Assembly (NCBI GenBank): GCA_964035545.1
Contig: OZ037773.1
Span: 897,751-961,750 of the forward strand
Length of the DNA stretch: 64,000 bases
Direction of reading: 5' to 3'
DNA from: Bugula neritina
Lineage: Eukaryota; Animalia; Bryozoa
Of the stretch, positions 1-57,045 are shown one piece after another. The notes under the pieces were generated by a model. That model saw only the letters and a list, made by a program, of their open reading frames with translations. It was not told the origin of the DNA and made no database searches. Both the position numbers and the translations under genes were made by a program. Each line of letters begins with the position of its first letter. Within the stretch, counting starts at the first letter, position 1.

Positions 1-859
1 ATGTGGATGGTCAACTACCGTAGGCGTCGAGGACATGCGGCTAAGCTCCAGCCTAAGTTCGTGGGATACTACGTGGTAGTTGAGGCGATACCCAATCATA
101 CATACAAGTTGGAGCGTTCTGGACGGGTCTCTGTCCAGAATGAAGCCCGCTTGAAATCGTATTGGTCTAGCCCAGGAGCAGCAGGAGAAGCCCCCCCCAT
201 TGTTGGAGCCCAGGAGGCAGACAGCAACGCGCGGGCGGCAACGGCATGGACCAGAATACGAAGTGGTTGTGCCGCGGGAAGAGGACTTGGTAAGGCAGGA
301 AAGGCCACTTTCATCAACGGAAGTGCGCCCACCGCCCCCAATACCAAGTCTACCCCCACCACTTCCGAATCCGCATCCGGAAGTGCAAAACCCCCCCGTG
401 GAAGGGGCTCCATCCGGAGACAATGTCGAGGAAGAAAATACCATCACCAACGACGGGCCAGAAACACCACAGGTGGAGCAAAATAGCCCACTAGTGAGTA
501 CACCGCCCCGGCCAACAACCACACCATCCTCCCCAGCTAGTACGTCACCTCCCCTGGAATGGGGACAGCGTACTAGACAACCCTCAGCATACTTGAAAGC
601 CTTCGTTTGTGACCGCGTTACAAACGGCAGTTACGAAAGTCTAGCTGGGCACTGTACGGAAAGACTGGCAGCAAAACGTGGGAGTTGTGAAGACCACGGG
701 AATACTAACTTTTGCGAAGGCGGAGTAGTAGACAAAACTACTACGCTCGAGGCAAATAGTTCCAGCCGTGCGCAGCAAACACGCTGCCCAGCCTTTTCCT
801 ACGCTGACATCGCCAAGGGCAGACGTATCCAAATCCAATCCACTAACATTCAAGCTTGA
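1..859 (+). pseudogene. pol: pol C-terminus of A (integrase GPY/F-SH3 region plus low-complexity tail), frameshift near 190-200
   Basis: ORFs 1-486 and 200-859 join to match the end of pol in D and E (...EAPPLLEPRRQT...FVCDR...FSYAD). Confidence 0.88.
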
Positions 860-868
860 ACGCTGAGT

Positions 869-2012
869 ATGATTTCAAATGCCGGGTTCCTAGGTGAGCT
901 TGCTCTGACCTAACATTCTCACTCATGGAATCAGGTCTAACATCAGTTAGTTCTAATTTAATCGTCCTGATTGAATCACAACTACTGGAGACTGAGTCTT
1001 ACGTGAAAGACGACGAGAACATAACAATGGCCGACGATCTACTAGATCTCGAGCTTGACACTATGTCTCTCAATCAGTCTACACGCCACGACACAGTCCT
1101 TCGAGTGCCGTCTAAAAAGATGTATGACTCTCAGACTAGGAACAGTTGGTTGTCATCAGAATTATGCTGTAAAGATCACACTCGATCTAACAATAATTCT
1201 GCTCTTTTAGATACCACTCGCTCTTCTCTCTCTCAGGACATGCCGCCATCAGAGATGGCTTGGGATGAGGAATCTACCCCCGTCCTGCTGCCGGAAGTAC
1301 TCCTAACTCAATCATGCTGGATTACCAAGGATACCGAGGCACTCATTCAGGAGAATAAAGGCAATGACCAATGCACCACCTGCCGTCTGTGTCAGCTTCA
1401 TTTCACCACACCTCGCAGACTCCGAGTCCACATCCCCCAACATTATGTCACCACCTTTTGTCCCTGTGGTGAATACAGTTACCACAGGGACTACATCCTC
1501 TGTCATCAGCGGACCATGGGATGCCATGTTGAACATCTCTACGAAGTCGACAAACCCTCTTTTCCTCATTTCCTCGATCTCATCCGGCCAATTATCTCAG
1601 ACCCGACTCGCTATGAACGGCTGCGCCAAGAGTTCCCCGCACCCCGTATCATTACACAAGGACCTTGCCCCAAGCCCCCGGAGTTCAAGACATCCCGAAC
1701 GCCCCGTCCATCACCCCCGCTCACACAGTTCCCTGTCCCAACTCCATACCCAGAGTCGTGCTACAACGCATAAAAGTGCTCCAACGATGGCGTCACTCCC
1801 CTCCCGTTTCCCCACGACCCTCATGTAAACGACGCTGGCCATCTTCATCCCCCAGTCGCCACTCTGCCCCCGCCCGGAACCTGAAGGAAACAGAAGACCG
1901 AATACATGAATTGGAGAGAGAAGTCCAAAGGTTGGCGCCTAGGATATCTGCCACCGCCTCCGAACTCCGGGCTCTCAGCGACTCTGTGGCCCGACTGAAG
2001 AGGAGTGCCTAA
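869..2012 (+). CDS. ORF3 of A: spliced zinc-finger / PxVxL / coiled-coil accessory protein (mini-exon 869-893, intron 894-1210, exon 1211-2012 with one decay frameshift)
   Basis: ATG at 869; CTAG|GTGAG donor; CTAAC..CTCTTTTAG acceptor; CRLC-x12-H-IPQ-H and CPC-x12-H-x5-C; PRVVL at 1749-1763; C-terminal helix LKETEDRIHELEREVQRL. Confidence 0.75.
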
Positions 2013-2355: not shown

Positions 2356-2641
2356 TGTAGTGGAGCACGCAATACGCACATCCGCGTGTTCCCTAGCCAA
2401 TTAGAGATGCGTCAGGTGACAACCCCCAGCAATGCGTAACGAGAGAGTAGTCAGTAGAGAGAGCGTACTAGCAATCAGAAAGATGTAATACTATAATCCG
2501 TGTGCTTTCTTATATCATTTTACTAGTATGTAATTATAAATGAATCTCTTCTAATCTTATCACAAGCCCTATATTGCTGCAGATAACCAAGTCATAGTTA
2601 CAAGCTAGGAACCACGCATTAGTATTGTGTAAATCACAACA
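2356..2641 (+). repeat. 3' LTR of A (286 bp)
   Basis: Follows the PPT, has TG...CA ends and a CCAAT box; the right boundary is fixed by the empty site in the duplicated copy. Confidence 0.85.
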
Positions 2642-2900
2642 CAATTGCTGTGGTATAGATATTACTCAAAACTCAAAGGCAGGCTAGTTGAACAGTATAA
2701 GCCAAGTAGATAATCGATGATGGTAGGCAATTGAATATTGTTTGTTTTCAACAGTTAGTCATTCTTCAATTGTTACTGAGGTGTTATATATTGTGGTGAT
2801 TTATGGTATATCGGAAAGGCAACTCTTATAATTACTTTGCTACTCTTATGTGCATCGTCTAGGATACGCTAAGCTACACTCGGCCTAGTACTGCCTACAT

Positions 2901-5900: not shown

Positions 5901-6880
5901 GCAGCTACGAGCTTTAAACAGACAGTATGACTGACACTGTGACTTATTTGGAGGGTAAGTCCATTAAGGAAATTCTGTTATTTAGTTAGAATTTAGCCTA
6001 GTAGCCGAATTCAGTCTCACTTCAGCATAATGATCAAGTTGGTCTCCTGGCGACTTGGAGTTGACTGATCACTGAGATGGTTTATGGATACCAGGAGATT
6101 CTTGACTATCCAACTCAGTCGAAGTGTGGTACTGACAAGATGAAGCCTCCTACAAGAAAGTGTGTGATTTAGTACCGCTTACAGTTGAATCCATGTACTC
6201 TGTTGCAGGTGAGGCTCCGCCTGCATCCCCCGGGTTGCAGGCTTTGCTAGATGCCCGACCCCAAACTGGGAAATGCATTTTTTTCCACCATGAAGCAGGA
6301 GAGCGTGCACGTGCTACAGCATTTCACAGTGACCTTGTGCCCCTGTAGCGTCCACAATTTTTATAGACGCTATCCTCTGTCATCAAAGGAATCAGCAGTG
6401 CCATGTCGGCCACTTAGTGGAGGTAGATCAAGACTCCTATGCGCAATTCCAAGACTTGATTCTCCTCATGTATCCTCCCCATTGAGACGTGAGTCATTGC
6501 TGCAGGGGTTTCACAGTTCCTGGCCAGTGATACCAAGTGACTCAGATGCCACTGGTTCCAACTATGACCCTGTAGTCTATGTGTTTGATGAAGTACAGAC
6601 GTGTTCTCTTTGCGTGATGGTAACCCGTGCTGGTCGGTCAGCAGAAGAGTCTACTCAGCCACTTCCCTCTCAGTCCTCCCATACCCTTGCATTGCTCCGG
6701 AAGAGAAGGGAGAAATCAAAAACTACGACAGTCCCTAATGACACAATAGATGCTGAGATATGTACTAACTTAGAGAAACTACAACGATGCTGCACACAAC
6801 TGTGTAAGGAGCAGTGAAGGACAGCATCGAAACTAGCTAGGTTGCAGAAGCTCTGCAACAGATGGACTGCTAACTGAACA
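2901..6880 (+). mobile_element. Old, internally deleted Gypsy element C (5' LTR ~2901-3242, degenerate PBS, gag with CCHC knuckle, PR/RT/IN fragments, ORF3 remnant; no 3' LTR seen)
   Basis: CWGCGSRRHLLMSC zinc knuckle, FLLDTG protease motif, IPDFTEIAQPLNRLT, KLLPKFVG, HVLQHFTVTLCPC. Many stops and frameshifts. Boundaries approximate. Confidence 0.82.
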
Positions 6881-7761: not shown

Positions 7762-8066
7762 TGTTGTATTTTTCAGAATTAGGGTTGATGTGTAACCAAG
7801 AGAGTCTATTTGTTGCTAGAGACTTCACCAGGATTAGTCGGGTTGATATCGTTGTATTTTAACACAAGAATACATAATAAAAAGGATATAAAAACTGGTA
7901 ACAAATCACACGTCTATTTAATTTACTGCACTATCCTCAACTGACTAGTAGCGCGAAGCTAACTACTGCTACTCACTAGCAGCTTCGCTAATTGGCTGAG
8001 TACATTGTTCCGGGTCAATACGCGACCCTGCGTATTGTGCTGTTGGTAGCTCCACGAGCCACCACA
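7762..8066 (-). repeat. 3' LTR of B
   Basis: Direct repeat of 14889-15194; the PPT is adjacent at 8067-8080. Confidence 0.95.
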
Positions 8067-8344: not shown

Positions 8345-9469
8345 TTAATCCTGGGCTGCTCGTTTCATACGTTTGATAGACTCTTGTAGCGACCGGAGCT
8401 CACTGGATGCGGCATAAATGCGGGGGGCCAGTCTGTAAACCTCTTGTTCCAGCTCATTTGTCCTGGTCTCTACTTCTCGTAGGTTTTGGGCCAGAGGGGA
8501 TGAGCGGGAGAAAGTCTGCTGCTGCCGGTGTCTTTTTTCGTTCTGCGGACGGAAGTGGGAGAGGAAGTGTGTACGTCTTCGTGTCTACCCTCTGTAGTAC
8601 GACACGGGGGAGTGTATGTGGTCGACGTATGGGACTGAGAGGTGGGGAATTAGATGACTTCGTAGGTTTATCTACGGGTTCCGAGATGATGGGTTTAGGG
8701 GAGGGAAAGCCTTGCTCCAGGCGAGATAGCCGAGCTGGGTCGGTGATGAGAGGTCTGATAGCTTCGAGGAATGCTGAGTAAGATGATTTATCCACATCGT
8801 ATACGTGTCCCTGAAAGCAATGCATGGTGCGTTGATGACGCAGTAGATAGTCTCGGTTATAACTATATTCCCCGCAGGGGCAGAACGTTGTGATAAAATG
8901 CTGCGGCAAGTGGACTCCTAATCTACGACGAGTTGTAAACCGCCGTTGGCATTCACGGTTATTGTCATCCCCTCTATATTTCTTAATTTCTGTCTCTGTG
9001 GCAGGGGTAGTCCAGTTGGAGGTTGCTTCTAGCTGGTGTGGCAGCTGTCTGGTTGTGGAAGTTGCTGGGACCGGCTCTGGGTCCCACGCCATCTCTAGAG
9101 AAGGCATGCCCGGGGAGACAGGCGCGAGTGTGTCTACAAAAGTAGAATTATTGTCAGATCGTGGCGGACCTTTACAACATAATTCTAGTGACTGTCGACT
9201 GTTACTAGTCTGAGAGTCACAACTTTTTGAATGCACTCGAGAGACCAGTGAATCATGTGTGGACTGACCAAGAACAGTGTCTAGCTCCAGGTCTAACAGA
9301 CCGTCGGCCATTACAGCGTCCTCGTCGTCATTCACGTGAAACGTGGTCCCTAGTAATTCTGATTCAATCTGATGAATTAGCTCAGAATTTACCGGCATCG
9401 AGCCTGGTTCCATGGATAGGAATACAAGATTTATACTGGCTTACCTGTGAACTCGGTATTAGTGTCCAT
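8345..9469 (-). CDS. ORF3 of B (mini-exon 9469-9445, intron 9444-9134). A 9-nt deletion damages finger 1, and there is a frameshift before the coiled coil
   Basis: ACAG|GTAAG donor; CTGAC..TTTTGTAG acceptor; HLPQH..FCPCGEYSY..H..C; PRVVL at 8595-8609; ELEQEVYRLAPRIYAASSELRSLQESIKRMKR. Confidence 0.78.
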
Positions 9470-14034: not shown

Positions 14035-14855
14035 TTTAACGCCCCCTGGTGTTGGGGTCGTCCTGGCTGTCTATGGTCTTGACCAGCACTAGTCCAGCCC
14101 GGCCCCGCAGGTGCTGGGGGCAACCGCGGTTCCTGACCGGGGCCAGCGCTGGCAAGAATCGTTACCAGCTGTCCCAACATCTCTACCATACGGTCTACTT
14201 CGGCTTCCACAGGGGGAGCTTCGGGGCCCGCCGTAGCTCTGGCAGCACTGACTCCAACTGCTGGTGGGTTCCCTTGCGCTCGGTGCATTTGGGTAGCCAA
14301 CAGATAAGCTTCTCCAGCCTTTAAGGCATCCTCTATCGTGGTGATTCCTTTAGCTCGTAGTTGGTGGTGTAGGCCCAGGTCGTTCAGTGACTGGACGAAA
14401 GCGTCGTAGGTGTAACGCTCTTGGTGTTGTGCTGGTAGGTCACCATATGCAATTTGTGCCAGCTTCTTCACCATCGCGGCATGCTCTTGCAGCGAGGTCA
14501 GCGGGGTGCGGCACAATCTCTGTAACCGGGTCCTGGCGTCTATTGCGGAGATGCCAAAGCGGCCCCGCAACGCAGCCAATATCCCGTCTACGTCCGTTCC
14601 CATTCCGTACGGCTTGGCTTGCTCCGCCAACGCTCTCCACAACTGGATAAGGGCCACTCTATGCGGCCATTGTGCAATATCCATGACTTCTCTAGACTCC
14701 TGTATAAACTGTTCGACATCTTCTGACCCAGTAAAGGTGGGGGCTTTCAAGCGATATCGATAAGCTTCTTCTCCCACATGATTCACAGGAATAACATCAT
14801 TTCTTCGCTCACCTTCTACTGGGGGTGGTTGCATTCTAGCATTTTCAGTCTCCAT
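13989..14855 (-). CDS. gag: gag of B
   Basis: Open 288-aa ORF just after the PBS (LKAPTFTGSEDVEQF); closely matches gag of D. Confidence 0.9.
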   Translation of the reverse strand: METENARMQPPPVEGERRNDVIPVNHVGEEAYRYRLKAPTFTGSEDVEQFIQESREVMDIAQWPHRVALIQLWRALAEQAKPYGMGTDVDGILAALRGRFGISAIDARTRLQRLCRTPLTSLQEHAAMVKKLAQIAYGDLPAQHQERYTYDAFVQSLNDLGLHHQLRAKGITTIEDALKAGEAYLLATQMHRAQGNPPAVGVSAARATAGPEAPPVEAEVDRMVEMLGQLVTILASAGPGQEPRLPPAPAGPGWTSAGQDHRQPGRPQHQGALNCHGPRTPFLPAGRN

Positions 14856-14869
14856 CTTTGATGTACACT

Positions 14870-14887: not shown

Positions 14888-14888
14888 C

Positions 14889-18977: not shown

Positions 18978-19844
18978 ATGGAGACTGAAAATGCTAGAAT
19001 GCAACCACCCCCAGTAGAAGGTGAGCGTAGAAATGATGTTAATCCTGTGAATTGTGAGGGAGAAGAAGCTTATAGATATTGCTTGAAAGCTCCCACCTTT
19101 ACTGGGTCAGAAGATGTCGAACAGTTTATACAAGAATTCAGAGAGGTAATGGAGATTGCTCAATGGCCGCATAGAGTGGCCCCTATCCAATTGCGGAGAG
19201 CGTTGACGGAGCAAGCCAAGCCGTACGGAGTGGGAACGGACGTAAACGGAATACTGACTGCGCTGCGGGCCCGTTTTGGCATCTCCGCAATAGACGCTAG
19301 AACCAAGCTACAGAGATTGTGCCGCACCCCGCGGACCTCGCTGCAAGAACATGCCGCGACGGTGAAGAAGCTGGCACAGATTGCGTATGGTGACCTACCA
19401 GCGCAACACCAAAAGCGTTACACATACAACGCCTTTGTCCAGTCACTAAACGACCTGGGCCTACACCATCAACTTCGAGCTAAAGGGATAACCAGAATAG
19501 AGGATGCCCTGAAGGCTGGAGAAGCTTACCTGTTGGCTACCCAAATGCATCGAGCACAACGGAACCCACCAGTAGTTGGAGTCAGTGCTGCCAGGGCCAC
19601 GACAGGCCCCGAAGCCCCCCCGCTGGAAGCCGAAGTGGACCGTATGGTAGAGATGCTGGGACAGCTGGTAACAATTCTGGCCGGCGCTGGCCCCGGTCAG
19701 GCCCTGCGGTTGCCCCCAACACCTGTGGGGCAGGGCTGGAGTAGTGCTGGTCAGGACCATGGACAGAAAGGACGACCCAAATACCAGGGGGCGTTAAACT
19801 GTCACGGCCCGCGGAGGCTCTCCCTCCCCGCGGGCCACAACTGA
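18978..19844 (+). CDS. gag: gag of D
   Basis: 288-aa ORF after the PBS; no CCHC knuckle. Confidence 0.9.
   Translation: METENARMQPPPVEGERRNDVNPVNCEGEEAYRYCLKAPTFTGSEDVEQFIQEFREVMEIAQWPHRVAPIQLRRALTEQAKPYGVGTDVNGILTALRARFGISAIDARTKLQRLCRTPRTSLQEHAATVKKLAQIAYGDLPAQHQKRYTYNAFVQSLNDLGLHHQLRAKGITRIEDALKAGEAYLLATQMHRAQRNPPVVGVSAARATTGPEAPPLEAEVDRMVEMLGQLVTILAGAGPGQALRLPPTPVGQGWSSAGQDHGQKGRPKYQGALNCHGPRRLSLPAGHN
19793..19836 (+). promoter_or_regulatory. Putative -1 ribosomal frameshift signal (G_TTA_AAC + 6-nt spacer + GC stem-loop)
   Basis: Stem GGCCCGCGG/CCGCGGGCC; the -1 frame is open from 19799 into the pol leader. The same arrangement is in B (~13996-14040, minus). Confidence 0.7.
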
Positions 19845-22800: not shown

Positions 22801-24415
22801 CTCCGGTGGTATTGGCCACAAATGGAGCGTGACGTCCGACTCAGAGTCAAACAGTGTGAGATCTGCCAGGCCAGTAAGCATAGCCGTCCCCCTGGTGAAG
22901 CGGGACGGCGGAGGCTATATGCTGGAAGGCCCTGGCAAGTAGTTGCTGTAGACCTGGTCGGACCCATGCCCCTGACCCCCAGAGGCAATAGTTGGATCTT
23001 AGTGCTGACCGACCACTTTACTAGGTGGGCGGATGCTCTGGCTATCCCAGATGCGTCAGCCCCAACAGTGGCCAGGGCATTAGACCAACATGTATTCTGT
23101 TATTTTGGTCTCCCCGAACAGATACACTCTGATCAAGGCGCTCAGTTCCAGTCTCAACTGATGAGCCACCTTTGCCACCTCTGGGGAGTAAATCAGAGCC
23201 GGACCACCCCCTACCACCCTCAAGGTAACGGGGTGGTGCAGCGCAACAACCGGATGCTAGGTGATGCGCTCCGGAGTCTCCTCCTTGGACGCGGCCAAGA
23301 GGAATGGGATACGGTGTTGCCGCAAGTCATGCGTCCATACCGTAGCACCCCACACACCAGTACTGGTGAAACCCCAAACCTCTTGATGCTCGGGAGAGAC
23401 TCGTGTCCCTGACCATCTTACCTACCACGTTCCAGAGCAAGACAACTCGGTTCACGAGTATGCCAGTGAACTAGTGGAACGGATGAAGGCCGCACACGAT
23501 ATACTGCGCGAACAGCAGTGGAAGGTGCGGCACGAAGATTCCGAGGAACCACCTCTCTACCAAACGGGAGATAAGGTGTGGATGGTCAATCACCGTAGGC
23601 GTCGCGGGCAGGCTGACAAATTAAAGCCTAAGTTTGTGGGACCCTACGTAATCGTCGAGGCTATGCCCAACCATACGTACAAGATTGAGCGCTCAGGACA
23701 GGTGTCTATCCAGAATGAGTCTCGCTTGAAGCCGTATTGGGCTAGCCCCGACGCAGTGGAAGAAGCCCCCCCGTTGTTGGAGCCCAGGAGGCAGACAACA
23801 ACACGCGGGCGACGGCGGCATGGACCTGAATACGAAGTGGTCATACCGCGGGAGGAAAACTTGGTGAGAGAGGAGCGACAGCTTCTGTCAACAGAAGCGT
23901 GTCCGCCACCGCCAAGTCTAATTCCATCACTTCCAGAAACCGAGCCGGTTCCGAAAGTGCAAACCCCCACGGAGGGAGGGGCTCCATCCGGAGAACATGA
24001 AGAGGTGACCACTAACGGTGAAGTAGAGAGGCCATTAGAGGCCCCTACTAATAAACCGGAGAGCGTGTCACCCCCCCTAGAACGGAGACAGCGTACGAGG
24101 AAACCCCCACCATATTTAAAAGACTTCGTATGTGACTGCATTAAAAGCGGCACGCATGAAAGTCTAGGGGAAAACCGTACGATAAAATGTTGGAGTTGTG
24201 AAACCCACGCAAATATCAACTTTTGCGAGGGCGGAATAGTGGGAGGAATTAATGCGCGTAAAGCAAATAGTTCCGACCTCGTGCCTCAGAAACGATGCTC
24301 AGCCCTTTCTTACGCTGACATCGCCAAAGGCAGACATATCTCACAACCAGCTCCAATCTTACCAAGAACGTTGAGTATGGACATTAATACCGAGTTCACA
24401 GGTAAGCCAGTATGA
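19799..24415 (+). pseudogene. pol: pol of D (PR-RT-RH-IN) with about 3 lesions: G-run indel ~20140, TAG at 22435, frameshift ~23395
   Basis: LLDSG, VYLDD, LDTDAS, H-x3-H..C-x2-C, DDE integrase core, GPY motif. Confidence 0.95.
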
Positions 24416-25252
24416 GTCTTGTATCCTTATCCATGGAAACGGGCTCGATGCCAGTAAATTCTGAACTATTTCACCAGATTGAATCAGAATTACTGGGAAC
24501 CACGTTTCACGTGAATGACGATGAAAACACTGTAATGGCCGACGGTCTGTTAGACCTGGAGCTAGACACTGTTCTTGGCCAGTCCACACATGATTCACTG
24601 GTTCCTCGAGCGCATTCTAAAAGTTGTGACTCTCAGGCTAGTAACAGTCGACAGTCACTAGAATTATGTTGTAAAGATCCACCGCGATCTAACAATAATT
24701 CTACTTTTGTAGACACACTCACGCCCGTCTCTCCGGGCATGCCTTCTCTAGAGATGGCGTGGGACCCAGAGCCGGCCCCACCCACTTCCACAACCAGACA
24801 ACTACCACCCCAGTTGGAAGCAACCTCTAACTGGACTACCCCTGCCACAGAGAGAGAGATTAAGACTCATAGAGGAGATGACAGTAACCGCGAATGCCGC
24901 CTATGTCAGCAGCGGTTTACAACCCATCGTAGACTGAGAGTCCACTTGCCACAGCATTACATCACAACGTTCTGCCCCTGCGGAGAATATAGTTACAATC
25001 GTGATTATCTACTGCGTCACCAACGCACTATGCAGTGCTTTCAAGGACACGTCTATGAAGTAGACAAATCATCATATCCCGCATTCCGTAACGCCATCAG
25101 ACCCCTCATCACCGACTCGGCTCGGCTGTCTCGCCTGGAGCAAGGCTTTCCCTCCCCTCGACCCATCATCCCTGAAACCATGGATAAGCCTACAAAATCA
25201 GCTAACTTCCCACCTCTCAGTCCTATACGCCAACCGCATGCACTCCCCCGTC
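24377..25252 (+). CDS. ORF3 of D (mini-exon 24377-24401, intron 24402-24712), both zinc fingers intact, C-terminus lost
   Basis: CRLCQQRFTTHRRLRVHLPQH and FCPCGEYSYNRDYLLRHQRTMQC; splice signals as in A, B and E. Confidence 0.8.
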
Positions 25253-27605
25253 ATTGTCCTACCAGCAGACAGTTCATATCAATAAGGTGAATAGATGAAT
25301 AGACACATTGCCGTTTGGTATTGCAACAGCTTGACTTTACTGCTTATAATTTGGATTACATAATCCTCAATGACTAAGATCATAAATACTTTCAATTCAT
25401 AACTCTGCTGTCTAGAAACCAGAGTTTGACGACCTGCAGTAATATAGTTATATTGGTGAGTGTGGTGTATGTGTGGCTTGAATGAAAATGAAAAGTATAA
25501 ACGGGAGTGTGTATGAGAGAACGAGAGGAAAGAGAGAGGAGAGATAGAGTGAATGAAGAGATTGAAGATTGTGCAGAATGCATTAAGCTATATGAGCGAG
25601 TGCTAGCCCACTTGAGACTTGACAATACCCCTACAAACAAATACCTCTACAGACTGATGGGAGCTAGAGTCACCTCGCAGCCAAGCCAAGCGACCTGTGC
25701 CTGTATGCTGGACTCGAGCTCACCTGAAGGCTACAACCCAATTATATTATTCGGTGAGATGCAATAGCTGAAAACTCCATATCCCGATATAACATGATGA
25801 TCCGATTTAAGGTTTGACTGCATTAAAATTCCCAAGTATGTTGTTGAGTCTCCTTAATTTATCTTTACTTTACCTAGCTTGTACAGGGGTTTGTAATTTC
25901 GATAGGAATACAAAATTGAATATGAATAACTATACCTAACTATAACTATAACTATAAGTCAATAACTATTAGCACTACTACTGGAATTGTGATTGTATTT
26001 ATAATAATTATCACCATCACAATCAATATTATTACCACAATGAACATCTTAATCAAAAATATAACATCATTACTACAGTTTTAGTTTATTATTATCTCAG
26101 TTGGGGTAGCACTTCCGCAGCAACTGAAATGCCTATAGAGAGGGAAGCCTCTTGTGACAACTTATATTAATATTACACCAGAGTTAGCACTTGTAGTTGT
26201 ACTTGTTACATTTACAGCAATTGCTGTTTGATCAGTAATCATAATGAGTAATTGCAATCAGTTATTCATATGTCATATATGATATAATGATTCATTACTA
26301 TTCAAATGGTGATCATAATATTAATCATAATGACAATCATAATGGATAATAAATATAAACTTCAATATGATAATGATTGAAATTTAAATGTGAAATTCAA
26401 AAAGAAAATGAAAATCAAATAATATCATTATTAAATTTAAATCAAAATGTCATTTGTCCTTGAAATTGAATTTGACGAAAAATATTTAAACTCATATTCA
26501 AATTTAAAGTAGTAATAAATTTGTATACGTTTACGTATTTTATGACAGCTTCCACGCACTACTTTACTAGTGCAACACACCAATCGACAACTAAACATAG
26601 TCACTAACTGTAAAGTGAGCACTTAACATAATTAATTAAAGTAGTAAAAATAGCATAGTGTAATGAATACCTGATAGTTGATCGAGAATTCAGTGTTGCG
26701 TTTAGTATAACGTTTCATTTAAATAAGATTGATTCCCGCCTACGCAACGACTGCTAGTTGTATTAATTAGATAGCAGCACGCCCTCGCCCATTGGCTGTG
26801 GTTTTACGCTTTGGTAGCCCGGATGTTCGTTGCAGACTGAACCTACAGCTAGTAGAATAGTAGCGCTCTAGCAATGCAAGTTTCATCGCATCAATAACAA
26901 TCAAATTTAACATGATATAATTATTAAAATGTAAATCAATTTGAATTGTGCATCAACAGCACACGCGAATCTGCTTCTTCTAGCTCACTGTCACACGGTG
27001 CAACTGCTGTAACCAATCACATTACTCTCAGACTGTGTCAGAGCCAGTCTTATTGCACTTACCATTACATCAACAAACAAATTTCTGGATACAAATACAT
27101 AATAGAGCATCAACCAATTAAATTAAGAGCTACAACTAGAAAGAGCTGAAAAGTTGACTTTAAAAATATCAGCACCACTGTCAGATCAGAGAATATACAA
27201 TATTTTATATTTTTGCAGAGTAGATACTGCACAGTAACTTGATGTATTTGCACCTTACAGAATGATATGCTAATAGTAATGGTGATTATGATTGGAACTA
27301 ATGGTTTGAATATATATATGTATAGCTTGAAAGTTTGTAGTAAAGTAGTGGAGAAGAAATTCAAACTTCATCATGGCCTTGCAAAATAATTCACTAGGTC
27401 ATACTCCATCATGGCCTTGTAAAAATATTTACCAGGTAGATACAACTGGTTTTTTCTAGCTAGAAAATGATTATTTTATTGATGAAAATAGAAGTGTTGA
27501 AACAGTTACATCCTCATGAAGACAGACATCAAGACTGAAACTATTTGCTAATGTAAACAATAGAAATGCCAAATAGTCTCATTACTATGAAGCTTGCAAA
27601 GATTG

Positions 27606-31590: not shown

Positions 31591-32385
31591 ATGACAGAGC
31601 ACACAACGAAGCACCCGGGAGGTAAGCCAGCCAATTTCTTGCATATGGAGGAGGTGTACAGAGATAAACTGACCGCTCCCACCTTCACGGGTGTAGAAGA
31701 TGTAGAGCAATTCATTGAAGAATTCCACGATGTAGCAAATGTCGCTCAATGGCCGCCACAAGTAGCCCTCCTCAAGCTGCGGGAAGTATTGACGGAGCGC
31801 GCTAGACCGTTTGGACAGGGACGGAGCGTGGCGGAAATATTCACTACACTACGGAGCCATTTTGGCACCCCCACTCTGGAACCCAGAGCCCGTCTACAAG
31901 TGCTACACCAGGCGGAAGGCACTCCGCTCCGCAACCACGTTGCCTTAGTGAAGAGGCTGGCGCGGAGCGCGTACAGCGACCTGCCAGAAGCACACCGACG
32001 GAACTTTACTCTCATTGACTTTATGCAATCCCTAAAAGATGTGGGTCTTTGCCATCAACTACAGGCAAAGGGAGTGACCACTCTAGAAAGTGCCCTACAA
32101 GTCGGAGAAGACTACCTCCAGGCCGAACAGTTACATACAGGGAAACCAAAAAGCACACAAGTCACCGCGGAGATAGCCCAATCACTCGGAGGGAAGATGG
32201 GCCAGCTGAGCACCAGGCTAAAACAGATGGCGAAGACTCTTACCAATGGCGGGCCCCCTAGCCGAGGACAACAGGGAGAGACCTCGGGGAAGACTACGCA
32301 GAGTAAGAGCAACAACAAGCCAGGGCCTCCCCGCTCCAGAGACCCCCAACCCAGAAAGAGGCCCCACGAGCAAAAGAGAGAATAA
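31591..32385 (+). CDS. gag: gag of E
   Basis: 264-aa ORF (LTAPTFTGVEDVEQFIEEF), homologous to B/D gag. Confidence 0.88.
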   Translation: MTEHTTKHPGGKPANFLHMEEVYRDKLTAPTFTGVEDVEQFIEEFHDVANVAQWPPQVALLKLREVLTERARPFGQGRSVAEIFTTLRSHFGTPTLEPRARLQVLHQAEGTPLRNHVALVKRLARSAYSDLPEAHRRNFTLIDFMQSLKDVGLCHQLQAKGVTTLESALQVGEDYLQAEQLHTGKPKSTQVTAEIAQSLGGKMGQLSTRLKQMAKTLTNGGPPSRGQQGETSGKTTQSKSNNKPGPPRSRDPQPRKRPHEQKRE

Positions 32386-36914: not shown

Positions 36915-38048
36915 ATGAGTATAAATACCGAGTTCTCGGGTAAGCTTGCTTAGATCTAACACTCCACTAATGGAAATAGATCTCACCTCAGTCAACTCTG
37001 ATTTAATCGATCTGATTGAATCACAGTTACTGGAGACAGAGTCACACGTGAATGACGACGAGAACATAGTAATGGCGGACGATCTACTAGATCTGGAGCT
37101 TGATACTATGTCTCTCAGTCAGTTTACACGTTCTGACACAGTCTCTCGAGTGCCGTATAAAAAGATGCATGACTCTCAGACTAGTAACAGTCGATTGTCA
37201 TCAGAATTATGCTGTAAAGATCAAACTCGATCTGACAATAATTCTGCTCTTTTAGACGCCACTCGCTCTCCTGACTACGGAGATATGCCACCATTAGAAC
37301 TGGCCTGGAACAGTGAGACACCTCCTACATCCCTACCAGACGTGCTACTCAAACAACATAGCTGGGTCGCACCAGAGACAGAGAAACTGATTCAACTACA
37401 CTGCGGCCATGACGGATACACCACCTGCAGGCTGTGTCAGCAGCACTTCTCCACCCATCGCCGTTTGCGCGTCCACGTACCGCAACACTTCCTAACTACT
37501 CTCTGTCCCTGTGGTGAGTATAGTTACCACAGGGACTACATCCTCAGACATCAGCGCACTATGGACTGCCATGTGGGACACTTGTACGATGTAGACAAAT
37601 ACAACTTCCCCACCTTTCTCAATCTGATCAAACCTTTCATTAAGGATCTCCCCCGCTTCGAACGACTCAAACACGGATTCCCCTCACTTCGCATCATCAC
37701 TCATGGACCGTGTCCAAGACCCCCCCAGACATAAGAAACCTACCAAGCCACCTCACTCTCCTCCCGCACAGACTATACCTCGTCCCTCCGCCCTGCCTCG
37801 AGTCCTATTTCACAGAGTCGAGATACCCCTCCCCCACTTCTATGCAGCCCTCTTCTAAACGCCGATGGAAATCCTCCTCCCCAAAACGGCAGGTCCCTAC
37901 AGCTCGCAATATAAAAGAAGTCGAGCTCCGTATGTATGATTTAGAAGCGGAGATTCAACGGCTAACCCCCAGAGTCGCCGCAGCCGCCTCCGAGATGAAG
38001 ACCTTTAAAGCTTCCGTGGCCCTCCTCAAACGGGGCAACCACGACTGA
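36915..38048 (+). CDS. ORF3 of E (mini-exon 36915-36939, intron 36940-37255), decay frameshifts in C-rich tracts
   Basis: TCGG|GTAAG donor, CTGAC..CTCTTTTAG acceptor, two zinc fingers, PRVLFHRV, SKRRWKSSSPKR, coiled coil IKEVELRMYDLEAEIQRL. Confidence 0.78.
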
Positions 38049-38893: not shown

Positions 38894-39642
38894 TCACTCC
38901 TGTAGTGAGCGCGATCTGTGCCGAGCTTGTCGGGCACGTAGCCTCCGCTTCAATCGCCCCACCGAGTTTTTCAGTTGGTATAGGCCTGTCGTTGTATCGA
39001 GCAGGTCCGGAGCTAGTTGTGTAAACTTGGCTTGTAGTCGCAGAAGCCGCTCTTCTACTGTAACCAATTGGCTGGGTCCTGGCGGGGTGGAGCAGTCTCT
39101 TGGGCGGGGGGGTGTTGTTACTTCTCCTGGTTCAGGGGCGCTACTAGGATTAGCAGGGGTAGTTATCGGGGCCTTTACCATGGGGGACTTCTGACGGGCA
39201 GACAGCAGTAGTATTTGGAACCTGAAGTTAGCGCAGCCAGGGTTAGAGCCTTCTTGACAACCGGCTTGATGACATCCCAATACTGGGGGAAACTGTCCTC
39301 GTCTACGACGTAGCCTTCTCCTGCGAAGCAGCTCATCTTATGTACTATAACTGGGTACGGGTACACGTCATGGAACCCGCACGGGCAAAAGTGCAGCAGG
39401 AAGTGTGCGTCTACATGTAGACGCAGTGAGCGGTGTGATGGGCATTCCTTGAGGCAGACCTCACAGGTCTGGCGGGGTCAACTGGGTCTCCAAGCTTCTT
39501 CTATCCTCCGTTCCGTCGCTGGCGACACCCATCTCTGTCGTCGGTGGAGCACCACGAGCAGGCCATGTTCCATTTCTGGTTCTTCCTCCATAGGCAGAGG
39601 GGTTGGCTGGTCCCGTGACCGAGGTGGTCACTCGAGTGTTAT
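38894..39642 (-). pseudogene. Divergent ORF3 exon 2 of F
   Basis: After a TTTCAG acceptor: WVSPATERRI..CEVCLKECPSHRSLRLHVDAHFLLHFCPCGFHDVYPYPVIVHKMSC..VDEDSF, then coiled coil VEERLLRLQAKFTQLAP..LKNSVGRLKRR. Confidence 0.78.
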
Positions 39643-39862
39643 CTGAAAGAGCTAACAGTGTTAAGGATTATACACTGAAGTACCGCCGGCATGTACAGCC
39701 TGACAGGTGCTATGTTCAGTTAAACACTCGCGAGATTCAGGCTAATGAATAGTTGATCGAGAACACACTCGCTATGGCAGATTATTAGAATCTAAGTCGA
39801 CGTGTGTTCCCACCACTGTGTTTCATTATCGAATCTTTAGCTTGCTAACTGGTATAGTTAGA

Positions 39863-40616
39863 CACAGGATAGTTAAGGGCATCCTCACTAAGAATATCAT
39901 AAATTTCTCTCAAAATGTAGTTTGGGTTCTTGAATAATACTACTCTGCGGGTGGCATGTGTGTTGCCTACTTGCAATTGTTTAGCCTAAGATCAAACTAC
40001 AACCAATAAGCAGCAACCTTCATTAGGGCTGCGTTATCTATCAACATTCCATTATAGGCGCTACGAAAACAAAGTACCAAGCAAGCTATTCATTATAGCC
40101 TGCCAGCTAGCAAGCCTGTAATTAGCATGTACGCGCCAATATCTTCTCATCCCTACGTGCTCATTGAAGCGTGAAGCACTGCCCGCTGCTAATTTACTAT
40201 GAAAAAACATAGCATTTTCAGTGTATAAATCACCAATTTGTGGGCAATCTAGAAGAGTTATTGGAAAAAGAAAAAAGTTACCCTGGAGAAATATCTCAGG
40301 ATTCCAGCAGTGCAATTTCTATTTAGATATCATGCTTTGCTGCTGAGATATTTTAATGGTACTGAAAAGTCAGCTTTTCAGGCAAAATTGGCCAAAATTG
40401 GGCAGCTTTTTGTCTATAACTTTGCAAAAAAAATTAAAATTGAAATTTCCAAAAAGTTACCCTGGAGAAAAAGAAGATCTACAGCATAGTTTTTAAATTT
40501 TGACTCTAGCACAATTAGGTGAGATTTTATTTTACTGGTACTGAATTCTTATATGATTACAATGCAAACCTCAGCAAAGCAGTTGCAGCTAAAAGGTTGC
40601 CTTTAACTATCCTGTG
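39863..40616. mobile_element. 754-bp MITE, CAC...GTG termini, 2-bp TSD GA (CMC/EnSpm-like), inserted in the ORF3 intron of F
   Basis: 23-bp TIR CACAGGATAGTTAA(G/A)GGCA(T/A)CCT. Removing it restores acttcagtcagctctaac, matching the equivalent region of A and E. Confidence 0.78.
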
Positions 40617-42419
40617 GAGCTGACTGAAGTAGTCTAGTTCCCGTACCAAAAACATAACTAACTCACCCTTCGATCCAGAATATTAAAATATTTTGATTGA
40701 GAGTGGTACTGATTATTGTTTTGTGGCATGCTACTCTTGACTGCATCAAAGTAGGAAAAGACCGGGCAGCGTGGTTGTGAAGCGTGACTAGGACTTTTTG
40801 CTTCCGGCGGAGGAATCTCATCCGTGATTCCGCCAAGGCAAAAGTTGATATTTGCGTGGTGTTCAAAACTCCCACGTTTCTTTGCCTGTCTTCCCATACG
40901 ATACCTAGCTAGACTTTCATAACTGCCGCTTGTAGCGCGGTCATATACAAAGTCTCCGAGGTACGCTGGAGGTTGCTTAGTGAGCGGTCCTGGAGATATC
41001 GTCACTGTGGGAGGCGGTGTGCTCACCCGTGGATTGTTATGTCTCACGGGTGGTGTTTCCAGCCTGTTTGTGACGGTCGTTCCTACGTTGGTGTCTCTGT
41101 ACGGAGCCCCTCCCACGGGGGGTTATTGCACTTCCGGACTCGTTTCTGGTTCCGGAAGTGGTGATGGCAGGCCTGACGTTGGGGCGATGGGCGCGTTTCC
41201 AAAGACGGAAGTGGCCTTTCCTGCCTCGTCAAGTTTTCCTGGAGAGTCATGGGCGCGTTTCTGGCCAGGTCGACAGTCTTCGCTTGCCAGGACCTTCTAG
41301 CACAATGCGTCTGCCGCCCCGTTTCACCAGGGAGAGGGCTATGCTTGTCGGTCTGGCAGATTTCGCACTGTCTCACTCTGCGCCGTATGTCCGGCTGCAT
41401 GTTGGGCCGGTACCACCGGAGTTGTAACTTGGTGACCACCCCCTGGACTCCCGCCTGAGTCTGCTGGTGGATGTCCCGTATCAACTCCCGGCAGATGGCA
41501 GCGGGGCAGACTATCCTCTCCCTTTCTGGCTGTCTGTTGTTGGCGGCCAAAGTCATGGTCAGCAGGCCATCTGGCCCGATCCGCAGGGAGTTCCAATGTT
41601 GACAGTACAGCCGTAACTCGGCGCATCCTTGTCCCCGATGTCTACCACTGGGTCGTCGCCCATCCTGTTTTGCTCGGTACACATCAGCTACCACCCCGGA
41701 GAAGCGAAGATCCCGTCAATGTCAGGTCCCGCTCCGTAGGGCTTAGCCTTGTTCGTCAGCGCCATCCTGAGTTTGAGCATGCCACCCTTGGTGGCCACCG
41801 TGCAACTTCCATCACATCTTGAAATTCTTGGATAAATTGCTCTATGGCTTCTTCGCCCGTAAAGGTGTGCGCCTTCAGCCGGTATCTGTCCTCACTGGGT
41901 TCTCTGGGAACTCTCACTTCTTCCAACACTACTGGTTTCACAGGTATAACAACATTGTCTTCCTCACCTTCATTTTAGTGGAATGGGTAGCTCCTACCTT
42001 CTTCTGCCCTCACTGTTGTACGCAAGATCCCACCGCTGCCATCACTGTTGTAATTTGCACAATTACTATGCGTGGGTTTTTGCTTGCATATTCAGTATGC
42101 GTTCTAACTAGTAATTACTAGGGTAGTAGCCGTATAATAATCTTCATTATCCACAATAAACACAGTATAAAACATTACATCAAATTACAGTAATACAATA
42201 GCCATCTAACTAGGTTCGTACACTTCAAGTCCTCGCTCACAACAACGTGATAATTGCCAACTACCCGGGAACTGTCACTGGGTCGGAAGTTCACCTTCTG
42301 GTTCTTCTTATTGGATAATACATGGGGGGCTTTTAGTATTCCCCGAACGGAGAGGAGATGATTTTACATTATGATACTGCGTGACCCACTACACCATGCT
42401 AATAAGTTTATTGGTTTTC

Positions 42420-54700: not shown

Positions 54701-57045
54701 CAGTCTAAAGATCAAGCCCTCTAAGTGTGCATTGTTGCAGCAAGAAGTTAAGTACCTAGACCATGTAGTTGGCCAGGACAAAGTCACGACAGACCCTGAG
54801 AAGGTCTGAGCTGTGAGAAACTAGGTTGTCCCATTGGACCTCACTGAATTTCAAGCATTCTTGGAGTTGATAGGGTACCACAGGCAGTATATACTCGACT
54901 TTACAGAAATTGCTCAGCCGTTGAATCGGCTGACAGTGGACGTATGCAGAGCAGCGAGCATTAGAGCATCTCAAGAATTGCTGGATGGCGACACCTATCT
55001 TGGCGTACCCTGATTCAGCAAAAGAGTACATTTTGGACACTGATGTGGGAGCTGTGCTATTTCAGGCCCAGAATGGTCCAAGGTGGTGGTGGCTTACTAG
55101 AAAAAAACTATGTCGGCCCATGAAAAGAGCTACTGCACCACCAGGAAAGAGGTTCTGGCAGTAGTTAAGGCGGTTAAGCATTTTAGACCGTATCTGTATG
55201 AGCGGATGTTCAGGCTTCGAACGGATCATGCATTCTTGATATGGTTGTGCAGACGAGCTGAACTTTATAGTCAAGTTGCGCATTTGCTTGAGATCCTGGC
55301 TGAGTTTTCTTACCGAATCCAGCACGGATCCGGAAAAAAACACGGTAATGTTGATGGATTGAACCGGCGGCGTAGAGAGAACTGTAAGCAATGCTTAAAC
55401 ATTGAGCCCAGGGATGGTGGAGCTTCTCGCTCGAACACGAAAGAGCAAATAGGGACAGCAGGTGTATACAGCTGAGAAAAAGGCCAACTCCGGTCAGAGG
55501 CCTCCTCCTACTCTTTTGTGTGAGCAGCAATGGCGATTGAGGAGTGCTCCTCCCTTGCATAAGGAATGGGACTGGGTCTGGATAATCAGTCACTACCAGC
55601 GGTGCGGACAGGCAGCTAAGTTACGGCCAAAGTTCGTGGGTCGTAATTGTGTGACTGAGGTCATGCTCAAGTACACGTATAAAGCAGATCGATTGGGTCA
55701 AGTGTCGATCCAATACGAGGCTCGCCTGTAGCCATTTTGAGTAAGCCCTGATGCATCAGGGCAGAATCCTACACTCCTGAAGCCTACGTGCCGTCTGACA
55801 GTGAGGGGATGGGCTAGGCCACACAGGATATTAAAGGTTTTAGTGCAGAATCCGGAAGAGGCGGCCAAAGAGCCGGCAGTAATTGAACGTTGTATTCCCC
55901 AGTGGTGTATGCACTAAATTAGTTGGGGTGCTCAGGAGGGGCGGAGCCAACTCACAGGCTGAAGGAGCTGTTATGTAATCACTATTGCTGTGTAGGGTTA
56001 CCCTTTTCAATTGTAACTATTGAAGTGACAGCACGTCTTCGTGACCATTGGCAGCTACGAGCCTTAAACAGACAGTATGACTGACACTGTGACCCATTTG
56101 GAGAGCAAGTTCATTAGGGAAGTTCTGTTATTTAATTAAAATTTAGCCTAGTAGCCAAATTCAGTCTTACTTTATCATAATGATCAAGTTGGTCTCCTGG
56201 CTAGATGCCCTTCTCCGCAAGGGGAGGATATATCTGATGCTGGTTTGGAGATGCTGTCCGACCTGCATTTTGGTAACCAGTCGACTGAACCACCACACAG
56301 ATGCTAATGCGATGCAAGTGACCACCAGTGATGCCTTGCCTTTGCCAGAGGCTCTACTCAAAAAGGCAAACTGGACTACCAGGCGGACGAAGATGTTGGT
56401 CCAGGTGATCATTGGAACGTAGACTAATAAGAAATGGGAAATGCACTTTTATTCCACCATGAAGCGGGTGAGCCTGCACGTGCCACAGCATTTCACAGTG
56501 AGCTTTTGCCCCAGTAGCGTCCACAATTTTTATAGACGCTATCTTCTGTCATCAAAGGAATCAGCAGTGCCATATCGGCCACTTAGTCGAGGTAGATCAA
56601 GACTTCTATGCGCAATTCTGAAACTTGATTCTCCCCATGTATCCTCCCCATTGAGACGTGAGTCATTGCTGCAGGGGTTTCCCAGTACCTGGCCGGTGAT
56701 ACCAAGCGACTCAGATGCCACTGGTTCCAACTATGACCCTGTAGTCTATGTGTTTGATGAAGTACAGACGTGTTCTCTTTGCGTGATGGTAACCCGTGCT
56801 GGTCGGTCAGCAGAAGAGTCTACTCAGCCACTTCCCTCTCAGTCCTCCCGTACCCTTGCATTGCTCCGGAAGAGAAGGGAGAAATCAAAAACTACGACAG
56901 TCCCTAATGACACAATAGATGCTGAGATATGTACTAACTTAGAAAAACTACAACGATGCTGCACACAACTGTGTAAGGAGCAGTGAAGGACAGCATCGAA
57001 ACTAGCTAGGTTGCAGAAGCTCTGCAACAGATGGACTGCTAACTG
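51730..57045 (+). mobile_element. Element C' (counterpart of C, retaining more PR/RT/RH sequence)
   Basis: LTR ~51730-52081, [46 protein letters not shown]. Confidence 0.85.

What the first reader, a model, noticed from the sequence alone, without database searches (positions are those of the whole stretch)
869..1211. ORF3 has a conserved sense-strand, phase-1 spliceosomal intron inside the retrotransposon
Seen: an ATG mini-exon of 8-9 codons + G ends in G|GTRAG, and 254-317 nt downstream is a pyrimidine tract + YAG (with a YTRAC branch point in A, B, D, E) that resumes exactly in the zinc-finger frame. Introns: A 894-1210, B 9444-9134, B' 59622-59312, D 24402-24712, E 36940-37255, C 5955-6208. 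F has a donor at 40666 and an acceptor at 39643, with its ATG decayed. Phase is conserved across lineages with unrelated LTRs. The ORF track misses this structure. Inference: regulated splicing or intron retention, since genomic RNA must stay unspliced to transmit the intron.
Basis: partly seen in the sequence, partly recalled or inferred. Interest (0 to 1): 0.88.

Follow-up and report, generated by a model that had tools for sequence, protein, structure and literature searches.

The report
Retrotransposon 'intron' is mostly coding sequence
The stretch read as an intron in the third gene of a Ty3/gypsy-type retrotransposon (probably in a bryozoan genome) is the conserved, apparently translated start of that gene, overlaid by a folded RNA element; the splice-like signals at its two ends are real and conserved, but nothing here shows that they are used.

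Summary
A short ATG mini-ORF ends in AG|GTRAGC, and 311-317 nt later comes CTRAC, a pyrimidine run and YAG, in phase 1. This holds in copies A, B, B', D and E and in four relatives from a bryozoan metagenome.

The "intron" is not a non-coding interruption:
- It has no stop in the ORF3 frame, against 8-14 stops in each other frame.
- It has its own conserved in-frame ATG (A: 925).
- It tolerates only 3-nt indels.
- It has pN/pS of 0.5.
- 35 of 46 related proteins read straight through it. In intact relatives ORF3 is one continuous ORF of about 365 codons.

Its synonymous sites are unusually fixed: 43% of third positions are invariant, against 5% downstream. That constraint tracks a conserved RNA fold. 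Hairpin HP1 holds the mini-ATG and has the donor-like motif at its base. Hairpin HP2 contains the "branch point".

No copy shows a precise loss of the segment. Copies C, C' and F give no independent support.

A second, gag-proximal donor-like motif, also in phase 1, suggests a gypsy-like subgenomic splice to the same acceptor.

Verdict: observation real, interpretation partly supported. Any splicing would be facultative, and there is no RNA evidence either way.

The parts
1..859 (+). Copy A: 3' end of pol (integrase C-terminal tail), cut by the window start; broken
   Evidence: ORFs; homologous to the integrase-bearing ORFs of D and E (Pfam rve, Integrase_H2C2; repeats D5 and D19)
858..889 (+). 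HP1: conserved hairpin. The stem contains the mini-ATG and 'codons 4-7'; the loop is the variable 'codons 2-3'
   Evidence: RNAalifold, 11 pairs, 100% of cells paired, compensatory changes in two copies; z = -2.0 to -3.1
869..913 (+). In 7 of 8 copies its stop sits at one conserved position but with varying stop codons
892..899 (+). Donor-like motif AG|GTRAGC (D2), invariant in 8 of 8 copies between variable flanks. Its GGU pairs with an upstream RCY at the base of HP1
858..1201 (+). Conserved structured RNA region overlapping the pol/ORF3 junction and the ORF3 N-terminal codons
   Evidence: 104 predicted pairs, 95% of cells paired; 20 pairs changed on both sides against 10.5 in shuffles and 1-4 in slid controls. 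Whole-region z = -3.1 (A) and -3.5 (D) against -1.4 for the downstream control. Third positions invariant in 58% of paired and 26% of unpaired columns, p = 0.003
925..2012 (+). ORF3 of copy A as one gene: N-terminal region, C2H2-like zinc-finger core, coiled-coil tail. Broken (one frame change) relative to intact relatives of about 365 codons
925..1212 (+).
   Evidence: Profile hit E = 8e-49; no stops in this frame; dN/dS 0.37 with depressed dS; predicted disordered
1157..1201 (+). HP2: 17-bp conserved hairpin with a variable 6-nt loop. Its 3' arm carries the 'branch point'; the variable R is the bulge
   Evidence: z = -4.2 to -5.1, 0 of 200 shuffles fold as well
1187..1210 (+). Acceptor-like motif (A1): CTRAC, pyrimidine-rich run, YAG, in phase 1
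1213..1778 (+).
   Evidence: Profile hit; model pLDDT above 90 for the homologous residues 121-240 of P0003; weak C2H2 matches
8348..9469 (-). Copy B: mini-ORF plus ORF3 module; ORF3 broken (one frame change)
58517..59647 (-). Copy B' (segmental duplicate of B): the same module; ORF3 broken
24377..25290 (+). Copy D: the same module. The C-terminal third of ORF3 was not detected. The pol frame runs through the mini-ORF
36915..38045 (+). Copy E: the same module; ORF3 broken (at least two frame changes)
5927..6817 (+). Copy C: decayed module of a distant lineage. Zinc-finger domain in two frames; no detectable N-region
56077..56986 (+). Copy C' (duplicate of C): decayed module without the GT-AG pair. 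An open frame leads into the zinc-finger domain
38942..40700 (-). Copy F: decayed module with about 1 kb of AT-rich filler between the two motifs
19019..19026 (+). Copy D: gag-proximal donor-like motif (D1), 43 nt after the gag ATG, phase 1
14807..14814 (-). Copy B: gag-proximal donor-like motif (D1), 43 nt after the gag ATG, phase 1
31620..31627 (+). Copy E: gag-proximal donor-like motif (D1), 31 nt after the gag ATG, phase 1, in a gag N-terminus that does not align with D or B

Best explanation
ORF3 is one uninterrupted gene.

The 'intron' encodes the first 95 or so residues, an acidic region predicted to be disordered. A tandem C2H2-like zinc-finger core and a C-terminal coiled coil follow.

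The same roughly 340 nt (A: 858-1201) also fold, on the sense RNA, into a conserved multi-hairpin structure. That fold freezes synonymous sites and accounts for much of the nucleotide conservation at the 'mini-exon' (HP1) and at the 'branch point / pyrimidine tract' (HP2).

ORF3 therefore needs no removal of this segment. The splice-like motifs at its ends are real conserved motifs whose use is unproven. If they are spliced, the event is facultative, not a constitutive intron.

Shown here: the open frame, the ATG, the indel pattern, the substitution pattern, the read-through in relatives, and the fold statistics. Inferred: that the N-region is translated, and that the fold is the cause of the synonymous constraint.
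For: - No stops in the ORF3 frame of the segment in A, B, B', D and E, apart from the T[AG]A inside the donor in four of them (E has none). The other two frames have 8-14 stops each.
- A conserved in-frame ATG is kept in 7 of 8 aligned copies.
- The two indels inside the ORF stretch of the segment are 3 nt. The single 1-nt indel lies upstream of that ATG.
- 35 of 46 related proteins read through the acceptor and 18 start at the conserved ATG.
- dN/dS is 0.37 and below 1 in 28 of 28 pairs. pN/pS is 0.50 in the ORF3 frame against 0.77 and 0.74 in the other frames.
- Codon periodicity appears in codons 40-60: 58%, 53% and 21% invariant at positions 1, 2 and 3.
- dS is about 0.6 in the segment against more than 1.4 (mostly saturated) downstream. 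43% of third positions are invariant against 5% downstream.
- Third-position invariance is concentrated in predicted paired columns: 58% against 26%, p = 0.003. Positions 1 and 2 show no such effect.
- Fold statistics: 20 pairs with double-sided changes against 10.5 +/- 1.9 in shuffles (0 of 500 reach it) and 1-4 in slid controls. z-scores are given.
- No relative's protein joins the mini-exon peptide to exon 2.
Against: - The block AG|GTRAGC is invariant although its flanks vary, and its pairing partner differs between lineages. That argues for a sequence-specific role such as U1 binding.
- The codon before the junction varies at positions 1 and 2, but its third-position A (the A of AG) never changes in 8 copies plus F.
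- Nucleotide identity drops sharply just after the AG.
- Strong, correctly ordered splice signals 311-317 nt apart in an animal Pol II transcript would be expected to be seen by the spliceosome.
- The coding signal in the segment is modest. The last 16 codons show no periodicity, and the control frames also have pN/pS below 1.
- How ORF3 would be translated from its own ATG is unexplained.
- Only 8 sequences in two or three lineages were available, and the fold was predicted from the same alignment that was used to score it.
Confidence: 0.6

Rival explanations
1. The segment is a true, non-coding spliceosomal intron. ORF3 starts at the mini-exon ATG, and splicing or regulated retention is required to make the protein.
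For: GT-AG with good extended consensus, a branch-like CTRAC and phase 1 are conserved in 8 of 8 aligned copies, with B' (the duplicate of B) making nine. Joining at the junction would recreate the same Asp codon.
Against: - The segment is an open, conserved, ATG-initiated frame continuous with the zinc-finger ORF, and most relatives read through it.
- A mini-exon ATG downstream of gag-pol would not be reached by scanning on a genomic-length RNA.
- The phase match has roughly a 1-in-3 prior.
- C, C' and F give no independent support.
Confidence: 0.07
2. Dual use. The segment is coding and is also a facultative intron. Unspliced RNA gives full-length ORF3. D2-A1 splicing gives a short isoform lacking the N-region, or in D/B-type copies a pol tail joined in frame to the zinc-finger part. 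HP1 and HP2 would tune use of the sites by masking the 5' splice site and the branch point.
For: - The conserved AG|GTRAGC island sits at the base of HP1, with lineage-specific pairing partners.
- The branch-like A lies in the HP2 stem.
- The A of AG is invariant at a degenerate codon position.
- In D the pol frame runs through the mini-ORF.
Against: - No intron-less copy among 46 related proteins and 8 window copies.
- With 43% of third positions invariant in the region, invariance at the few splice-critical synonymous sites is not significant on its own.
- The frame relation between pol and the mini-ORF is not conserved.
Confidence: 0.25
3. The acceptor-like site A1 is the 3' splice site of a retrovirus- or gypsy-like subgenomic mRNA whose 5' splice site is the gag-proximal motif D1. 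The gag ATG plus 10-14 codons would be joined in frame to the zinc-finger part. D2 would be an auxiliary or decoy U1 site.
For: - AG|GTRAGC lies 31 nt (E) or 43 nt (D, B) after the gag ATG, in phase 1, within gag N-termini that otherwise do not align.
- A1 is also in phase 1.
- Drosophila gypsy expresses env from a spliced RNA that takes its start codon from gag (PMC8096092).
Against: - D1 was seen in only two lineages (three copies).
- The phase match is a 1-in-3 event.
- This product would omit the N-region, which nevertheless looks translated.
- No RNA evidence is available.
- Other acceptor candidates in the element were not surveyed.
Confidence: 0.35
4. No splicing at all. The motifs are conserved only because they are part of the RNA fold and of coding sequence. 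The mini-ORF acts as an upstream ORF, or the hairpins act in translation, packaging or export.
For: - HP1 explains the odd pattern in the mini-exon: 'codons 4-7' are fixed at all three positions while 'codons 2-3' are free.
- HP2 explains CTRAC with its variable R as a bulge.
- The mini-ORF stop is kept at one position with varying stop codons.
Against: The GGTRAGC block and the last 9 nt before the AG lie mostly outside well-supported helices yet are conserved. The same 8-mer recurs just after the gag ATG.
Confidence: 0.3

Closest known systems
Drosophila gypsy (errantivirus) env expression: spliced subgenomic mRNA that takes its start codon from gag (PMC8096092)
   Same: It is a Ty3/gypsy element with a third ORF after pol. 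A donor-like motif sits just after the gag ATG, and an acceptor-like motif in matching phase sits ahead of the conserved part of ORF3.
   Different: ORF3 here is not env-like. It is a zinc-finger and coiled-coil protein. The acceptor lies about 95 codons inside the ORF, not in front of it. There is a second donor-like motif at the end of pol. No RNA evidence exists.
Ty1/copia alternative splicing (Arabidopsis EVD shGAG RNA; PMC5580714)
   Same: A coding segment of a retrotransposon doubles as a facultative intron that must be retained in the genomic RNA. U1 binding at the donor has a regulatory role.
   Different: That case is a different superfamily and host kingdom. Its intron covers the protease region and serves the gag:pol ratio. 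Here the segment is the start of an accessory gene, and its splicing is unproven.
Ogre elements of legumes: intron in pol, partially spliced (PMC2533021 and the Neumann et al. 2003 title in its reference list)
   Same: A sense-strand GT-AG intron inside a Ty3/gypsy element, transmitted through unspliced RNA.
   Different: From my own knowledge, the Ogre intron is a non-coding interruption between reading frames whose removal is needed to join them. Here the frame is already continuous.
Complex-retrovirus tat/rev-type layout with a structured RNA (RRE-like) inside a coding, facultatively retained intron (own knowledge, not tested by any tool)
   Same: A short first coding exon, a coding and highly structured 'intron', and a small accessory protein. 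The protein has a leucine-rich, acidic motif (by eye it fits the pattern hydrophobic-x3-hydrophobic-x2-hydrophobic-x-hydrophobic), a nucleic-acid-binding domain, a basic patch and an oligomerisation helix.
   Different: No sequence or fold relationship was found. Here the intron encodes part of the same protein. The function is entirely untested.
Exitrons (introns inside protein-coding exons; own knowledge)
   Same: A stop-free coding segment bounded by GT-AG, whose removal would keep a reading frame.
   Different: The 5' site lies upstream of the ORF3 start codon, so removal would swap the N-terminus and the start codon, not delete an internal segment.

Membership tests
U2-type spliceosomal intron | GT at the 5' end and AG at the 3' end, with extended consensus | tested here: met
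   AG|GTRAGC and YAG in 8 of 8 aligned copies
U2-type spliceosomal intron | Branch-point-like sequence and pyrimidine tract 18-40 nt upstream of the AG | tested here: met
   CTRAC with the A at -21; 10-11 of 12 pyrimidines from -14 to -3. These bases are also the 3' arm of HP2.
U2-type spliceosomal intron | Actual removal from RNA (junction reads, cDNA) | not testable with these tools
   No transcript data available
U2-type spliceosomal intron | Existence of copies with precise loss of the segment (processed copies) | tested here: not met
   None among 46 related proteins or the window copies. Their absence does not exclude splicing.
   The frame is continuous through the segment, with its own conserved ATG, 3-nt indels and dN/dS below 1
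Ty3/gypsy (Metaviridae) LTR retrotransposon | pol order protease, RT, RNase H, integrase; flanking LTRs | tested here: met
   Pfam Asp_protease_2, RVT_1, RT_RNaseH, Integrase_H2C2 and rve in D and E; LTR pairs at 97% identity
gypsy-type spliced ORF3 mRNA | 5' splice site at the start of gag and 3' splice site ahead of ORF3, in matching phase | tested here: inconclusive
   The motifs are present and both are in phase 1. They were seen in only three copies, and the acceptor lies inside ORF3.
gypsy-type spliced ORF3 mRNA | ORF3 is an envelope-like glycoprotein | tested here: not met
   No Pfam family. The model shows a disordered N-region, a zinc-finger core and a long helix.
Classical C2H2 zinc finger | C-x2-C-x12-H-x3-H spacing and beta-beta-alpha fold | tested here: inconclusive
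   The spacing is read directly in ORF3. Pfam zf-C2H2 was not reported. A profile against PDB gives SALL4 fingers at E = 0.009. Foldseek top hits are all C2H2 arrays but with E >= 0.76.
Rev/RRE-like export module | Structured cis RNA within a retained intron | tested here: inconclusive
   A conserved fold is supported. There is no Rfam match and the function is unknown.
Rev/RRE-like export module | The protein binds that RNA and carries a functional export signal | not testable with these tools
   Only a by-eye match to a leucine-rich pattern in the N-region
Exitron | Both splice sites lie inside one coding exon | tested here: not met
   The donor-like motif lies 31 nt upstream of the ORF3 ATG

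The most novel reading that the evidence does not exclude
This family would be a 'complex' Ty3/gypsy retrotransposon of an invertebrate. A zinc-finger and coiled-coil accessory protein would act together with a roughly 340-nt structured RNA that sits inside a coding, facultatively removed segment. Two phase-matched 5' splice sites (after the gag ATG and at the end of pol) would share one 3' splice site. Together these would control which RNAs are spliced, exported, translated or packaged, a functional analogue of the retroviral Rev/RRE or packaging-signal-in-intron logic that arose outside the Retroviridae.
Probability: 0.15. Interest if true: 0.8.

Novelty: new variant of a known kind. Interest (0 to 1): 0.5.

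Why it matters
Taken at face value, the finding would add an intron-bearing accessory gene to animal LTR retrotransposons. The evidence shows something different that can be checked. An accessory ORF3 has a 5' part under two layers of selection at once, on the protein and on an RNA fold. Conserved splice-like signals bracket it, and a gypsy-like donor motif sits at the start of gag.

This makes the family a good natural case for asking how retroelements without env regulate subgenomic expression. It is also a caution: GT...AG plus phase conservation inside repeats can be mimicked by overlapping coding and structural constraints.

Tried and rejected
- Pfam on five ORF3 versions: no family.
- Rfam on 780-1300 at E <= 1: nothing.
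- Scans of viral contigs and metagenome contigs for relatives: no confirmed locus.
- Profile of the N-region (protein) and of the whole segment (DNA) against C, C' and F: no significant match, so those lineages cannot be used as independent 'introns'.
- Foldseek against PDB: no significant hit.
- HP3 (A: 1124-1156): not more stable than shuffles in A. It is kept only as part of the alignment fold.
- Direct pairing of the donor with the acceptor tract in A's minimum-energy fold: not reproduced in D.
- A conserved acceptor between the pol end and the ORF3 ATG, which would let a gag-donor splice deliver full-length ORF3: none found by reading the alignment.
- A -1 frameshift from pol into ORF3: rejected. 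The ORF3 frame has a stop inside the donor motif, and no slippery site lies in the few bases left.
- The mini-exon as simply the pol tail: rejected as a general rule. The pol stop lies before it in A/E-type copies, and the frame relation differs by 1 nt in one relative.
- Literature searches for an already described zinc-finger ORF3 or 'exitron' in retrotransposons: nothing relevant (one search was a malformed query).

Full report
CONTEXT. The window is a nest of Ty3/gypsy-type LTR retrotransposon copies (protease, RT, RNase H and integrase by Pfam; LTR pairs) plus one non-LTR element. They sit in AT-rich DNA. Eight copies carry a third ORF after pol: A (cut by the window start), B, B', D, E, and the more distant and decayed C, C' and F.

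Related ORF3 proteins (46 hits, 43-78% identical) come almost entirely from JGI host-associated metagenomes. Their contig names carry AY690838, which papers cite as the Bugula neritina mitochondrial genome. The family therefore lives in a bryozoan, and the window is probably from such an animal. That is an inference from naming only.

THE OBSERVATION. In A, B, B', D and E an ATG is followed by 8 codons plus G, then G|GTRAGC. After 311-317 nt comes CTRAC, a pyrimidine-rich run and YAG, and reading resumes in the zinc-finger frame. In an alignment of A, E, D and B with four relatives (L001-L004) all of these are present in 8 of 8, and the 25-nt mini-exon has no indel.

A single such arrangement is not rare. 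AGGTRAGY occurs 11 times in the window against 8.7 expected. 23 of 66 G|GTRAG sites have an upstream phase-1 ATG. What exceeds chance is conservation between lineages whose downstream synonymous sites are saturated.

THE 'INTRON' IS CODING.
- In A, B, B', D and E the segment has no stop in the ORF3 frame, apart from the T[AG]A inside the donor in four of them (E has none). The other two frames have 8-14 stops each.
- A conserved in-frame ATG lies about 31 nt in (A: 925) and is kept in 7 of 8 copies.
- The two indels inside the ORF stretch of the segment are 3 nt. The one 1-nt indel lies upstream of that ATG.
- The ORF list shows the continuous frame.
- 35 of the 46 related proteins read through the acceptor, and 18 start at the conserved ATG. 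The acceptor bases are simply codons of a highly conserved peptide stretch.
- dN/dS in the segment is 0.37 and below 1 in all 28 pairs.
- Recomputed in all three frames, pN/pS is 0.50 in the ORF3 frame against 0.77 and 0.74.
- Codons 40-60 show clear third-position periodicity.

In intact relatives ORF3 is about 365 codons. The model of P0003 is disordered over residues 1-118. Residues 121-240 form a confident core (pLDDT above 90) with two C2H2-like fingers. Residues 315-364 form a long helix. The only PDB matches are weak C2H2 hits. None of the window copies keeps ORF3 whole: A and B have one frame change each, B' and E more, D lacks a detectable C-terminal third, and C, C' and F are decayed.

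THE SEGMENT IS ALSO A CONSERVED RNA FOLD. Synonymous sites are abnormally fixed: dS is about 0.6 against more than 1.4 downstream. 43% of third positions are invariant against 5% downstream. In the last 16 codons all three positions are equally fixed. Nucleotide identity peaks in the last 100 nt of the segment and falls just after the AG.

RNAalifold on the eight copies predicts a multi-hairpin fold from 858 to 1201 in A coordinates.
- HP1 (858-889) has the mini-ATG and 'codons 4-7' in its stem and the freely varying 'codons 2-3' as its loop. Two copies carry compensatory changes. The GGU of the donor-like motif pairs with an upstream RCY at the base of HP1 in 8 of 8 copies, and the extended partners differ between lineages.
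- HP2 (1157-1201) is a 17-bp stem with a variable 6-nt loop. The variable R of CTRAC is the bulge.

Statistics for the fold:
- 95% of cells are paired.
- 20 pairs changed on both sides, against 10.5 +/- 1.9 in shuffles (0 of 500 reach it) and 1-4 in slid controls.
- HP2 has z = -4.2 to -5.1 and HP1 has z = -2.0 to -3.1.
- The whole region has z = -3.1 (A) and -3.5 (D), against -1.4 for the next 358 nt.
- Third positions are invariant in 58% of paired and 26% of unpaired columns (p = 0.003). Positions 1 and 2 show no such difference.
- There is no Rfam family.

Caveats: there are eight sequences in two or three lineages, and the fold was predicted from the alignment on which it was scored.

WHAT STILL SPEAKS FOR SPLICE SITES.
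- AG|GTRAGC is an invariant island between variable flanks, and its pairing partner changes between lineages.
- The A of AG sits at a degenerate third position of a codon whose first two positions vary, yet it never changes.
- Both motifs survive in the decayed F.
- The same 8-mer recurs 31 nt (E) or 43 nt (D, B) after the gag ATG, again in phase 1, inside gag N-termini that otherwise do not align.

That is the layout by which Drosophila gypsy makes its ORF3 mRNA, taking the start codon from gag (PMC8096092). A facultative, coding intron is also known in Ty1/copia (PMC5580714), and an intron in pol is known in Ogre (PMC2533021).

- C' (the duplicate of C) lacks the GT-AG pair. It diverges from C half-way through the segment, and it has an open frame leading into the zinc-finger domain.
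- F has about 1 kb of AT-rich, repeat-bearing filler between the motifs.
- B' and C' are products of a segmental duplication, not independent insertions.
- No relative shows the mini-exon peptide joined to exon 2.

MECHANISM, WITH LIKELIHOODS.
- Most likely (0.6): ORF3 is continuous. Its 5' part is both translated and part of a structured cis-RNA. D2-A1 removal is not required.
- Not exclusive of this: the acceptor may serve a gag-donor subgenomic splice (0.35).
- D2-A1 may be removed facultatively (0.25).
- The motifs may never be spliced (0.3).

Translation of the N-region and the role of the fold (packaging, export, splice masking or translation) are inferred, not shown. How ORF3's own ATG is reached remains unexplained. 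It lies after gag-pol and after a 12-14-codon mini-ORF whose stop position is conserved.

STEPS LEFT OUT, AND DISCLOSURES.
Exon 2 was searched by reference as part of the standing ORF. Exon 1 (8 codons) is too short for any search. Phase was judged from coordinates only.
2. Loci L001-L005 were fetched by look-up, and two pattern scans were run, before I knew that the host is an animal. From then on I fetched no more. I used the five loci already in hand only for alignment and counts. If those look-ups count as a slip, it is stated here, and nothing was deleted.
3. While reading copy C by eye early on, I worked out roughly where its ORF3 changes frame. That is not recorded in the notes or in this report. 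Only counts are given.
Profiles (HMMs) were used only for searching, and the scripts printed only outer bounds, counts and scores for broken copies.

Noticed in passing
window 19019-19026 (+), 14807-14814 (-), 31620-31627 (+): A second conserved donor-like AG|GTRAGC lies 31-43 nt after the gag ATG, in phase 1, in gag N-termini that otherwise do not align. It looks like a gypsy- or retrovirus-type major 5' splice site.
   Followed up: partly
window about 2400-15200 and about 51900-64000: The block C+B recurs as C'+B' at a constant spacing of about 50.2 kb with 87-99% identity. This is a segmental duplication, so these pairs are not independent insertions.
   Followed up: partly
window 46968-50156 (+): A non-LTR retrotransposon (endonuclease/exonuclease/phosphatase domain plus RT), split into two ORFs.
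   Followed up: no
window 30845-31144 and 42046-42345; 31264-31538 and 38377-38651: A 93%-identical repeat pair brackets both copy E (whose own LTRs are 97% identical) and the F remnant. E appears to be nested in or next to F.
   Followed up: no
window 46344-46593 (-): An isolated gag-related fragment just upstream of the non-LTR element.
   Followed up: no
window 39700-40640 (-): The AT-rich filler inside copy F contains an internal direct repeat of a short unit. It may be a nested small element.
   Followed up: no
window 904-913 and equivalents (alignment A3, columns 51-53): The mini-ORF stop sits at one conserved position in 7 of 8 copies but is TAG, TGA or TAA. This is the signature of a selected stop. 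In D/B-type copies it is also the pol stop.
   Followed up: partly
window 1027-1065 (ORF3 residues 35-47 of copy A): A highly conserved acidic, leucine-rich stretch that by eye fits a classical nuclear-export-signal spacing. This was not tested.
   Followed up: no
L004 4825-5001 (-): A host histone-deacetylase exon lies next to a related element on the metagenome contig. This is consistent with a eukaryotic host genome.
   Followed up: no
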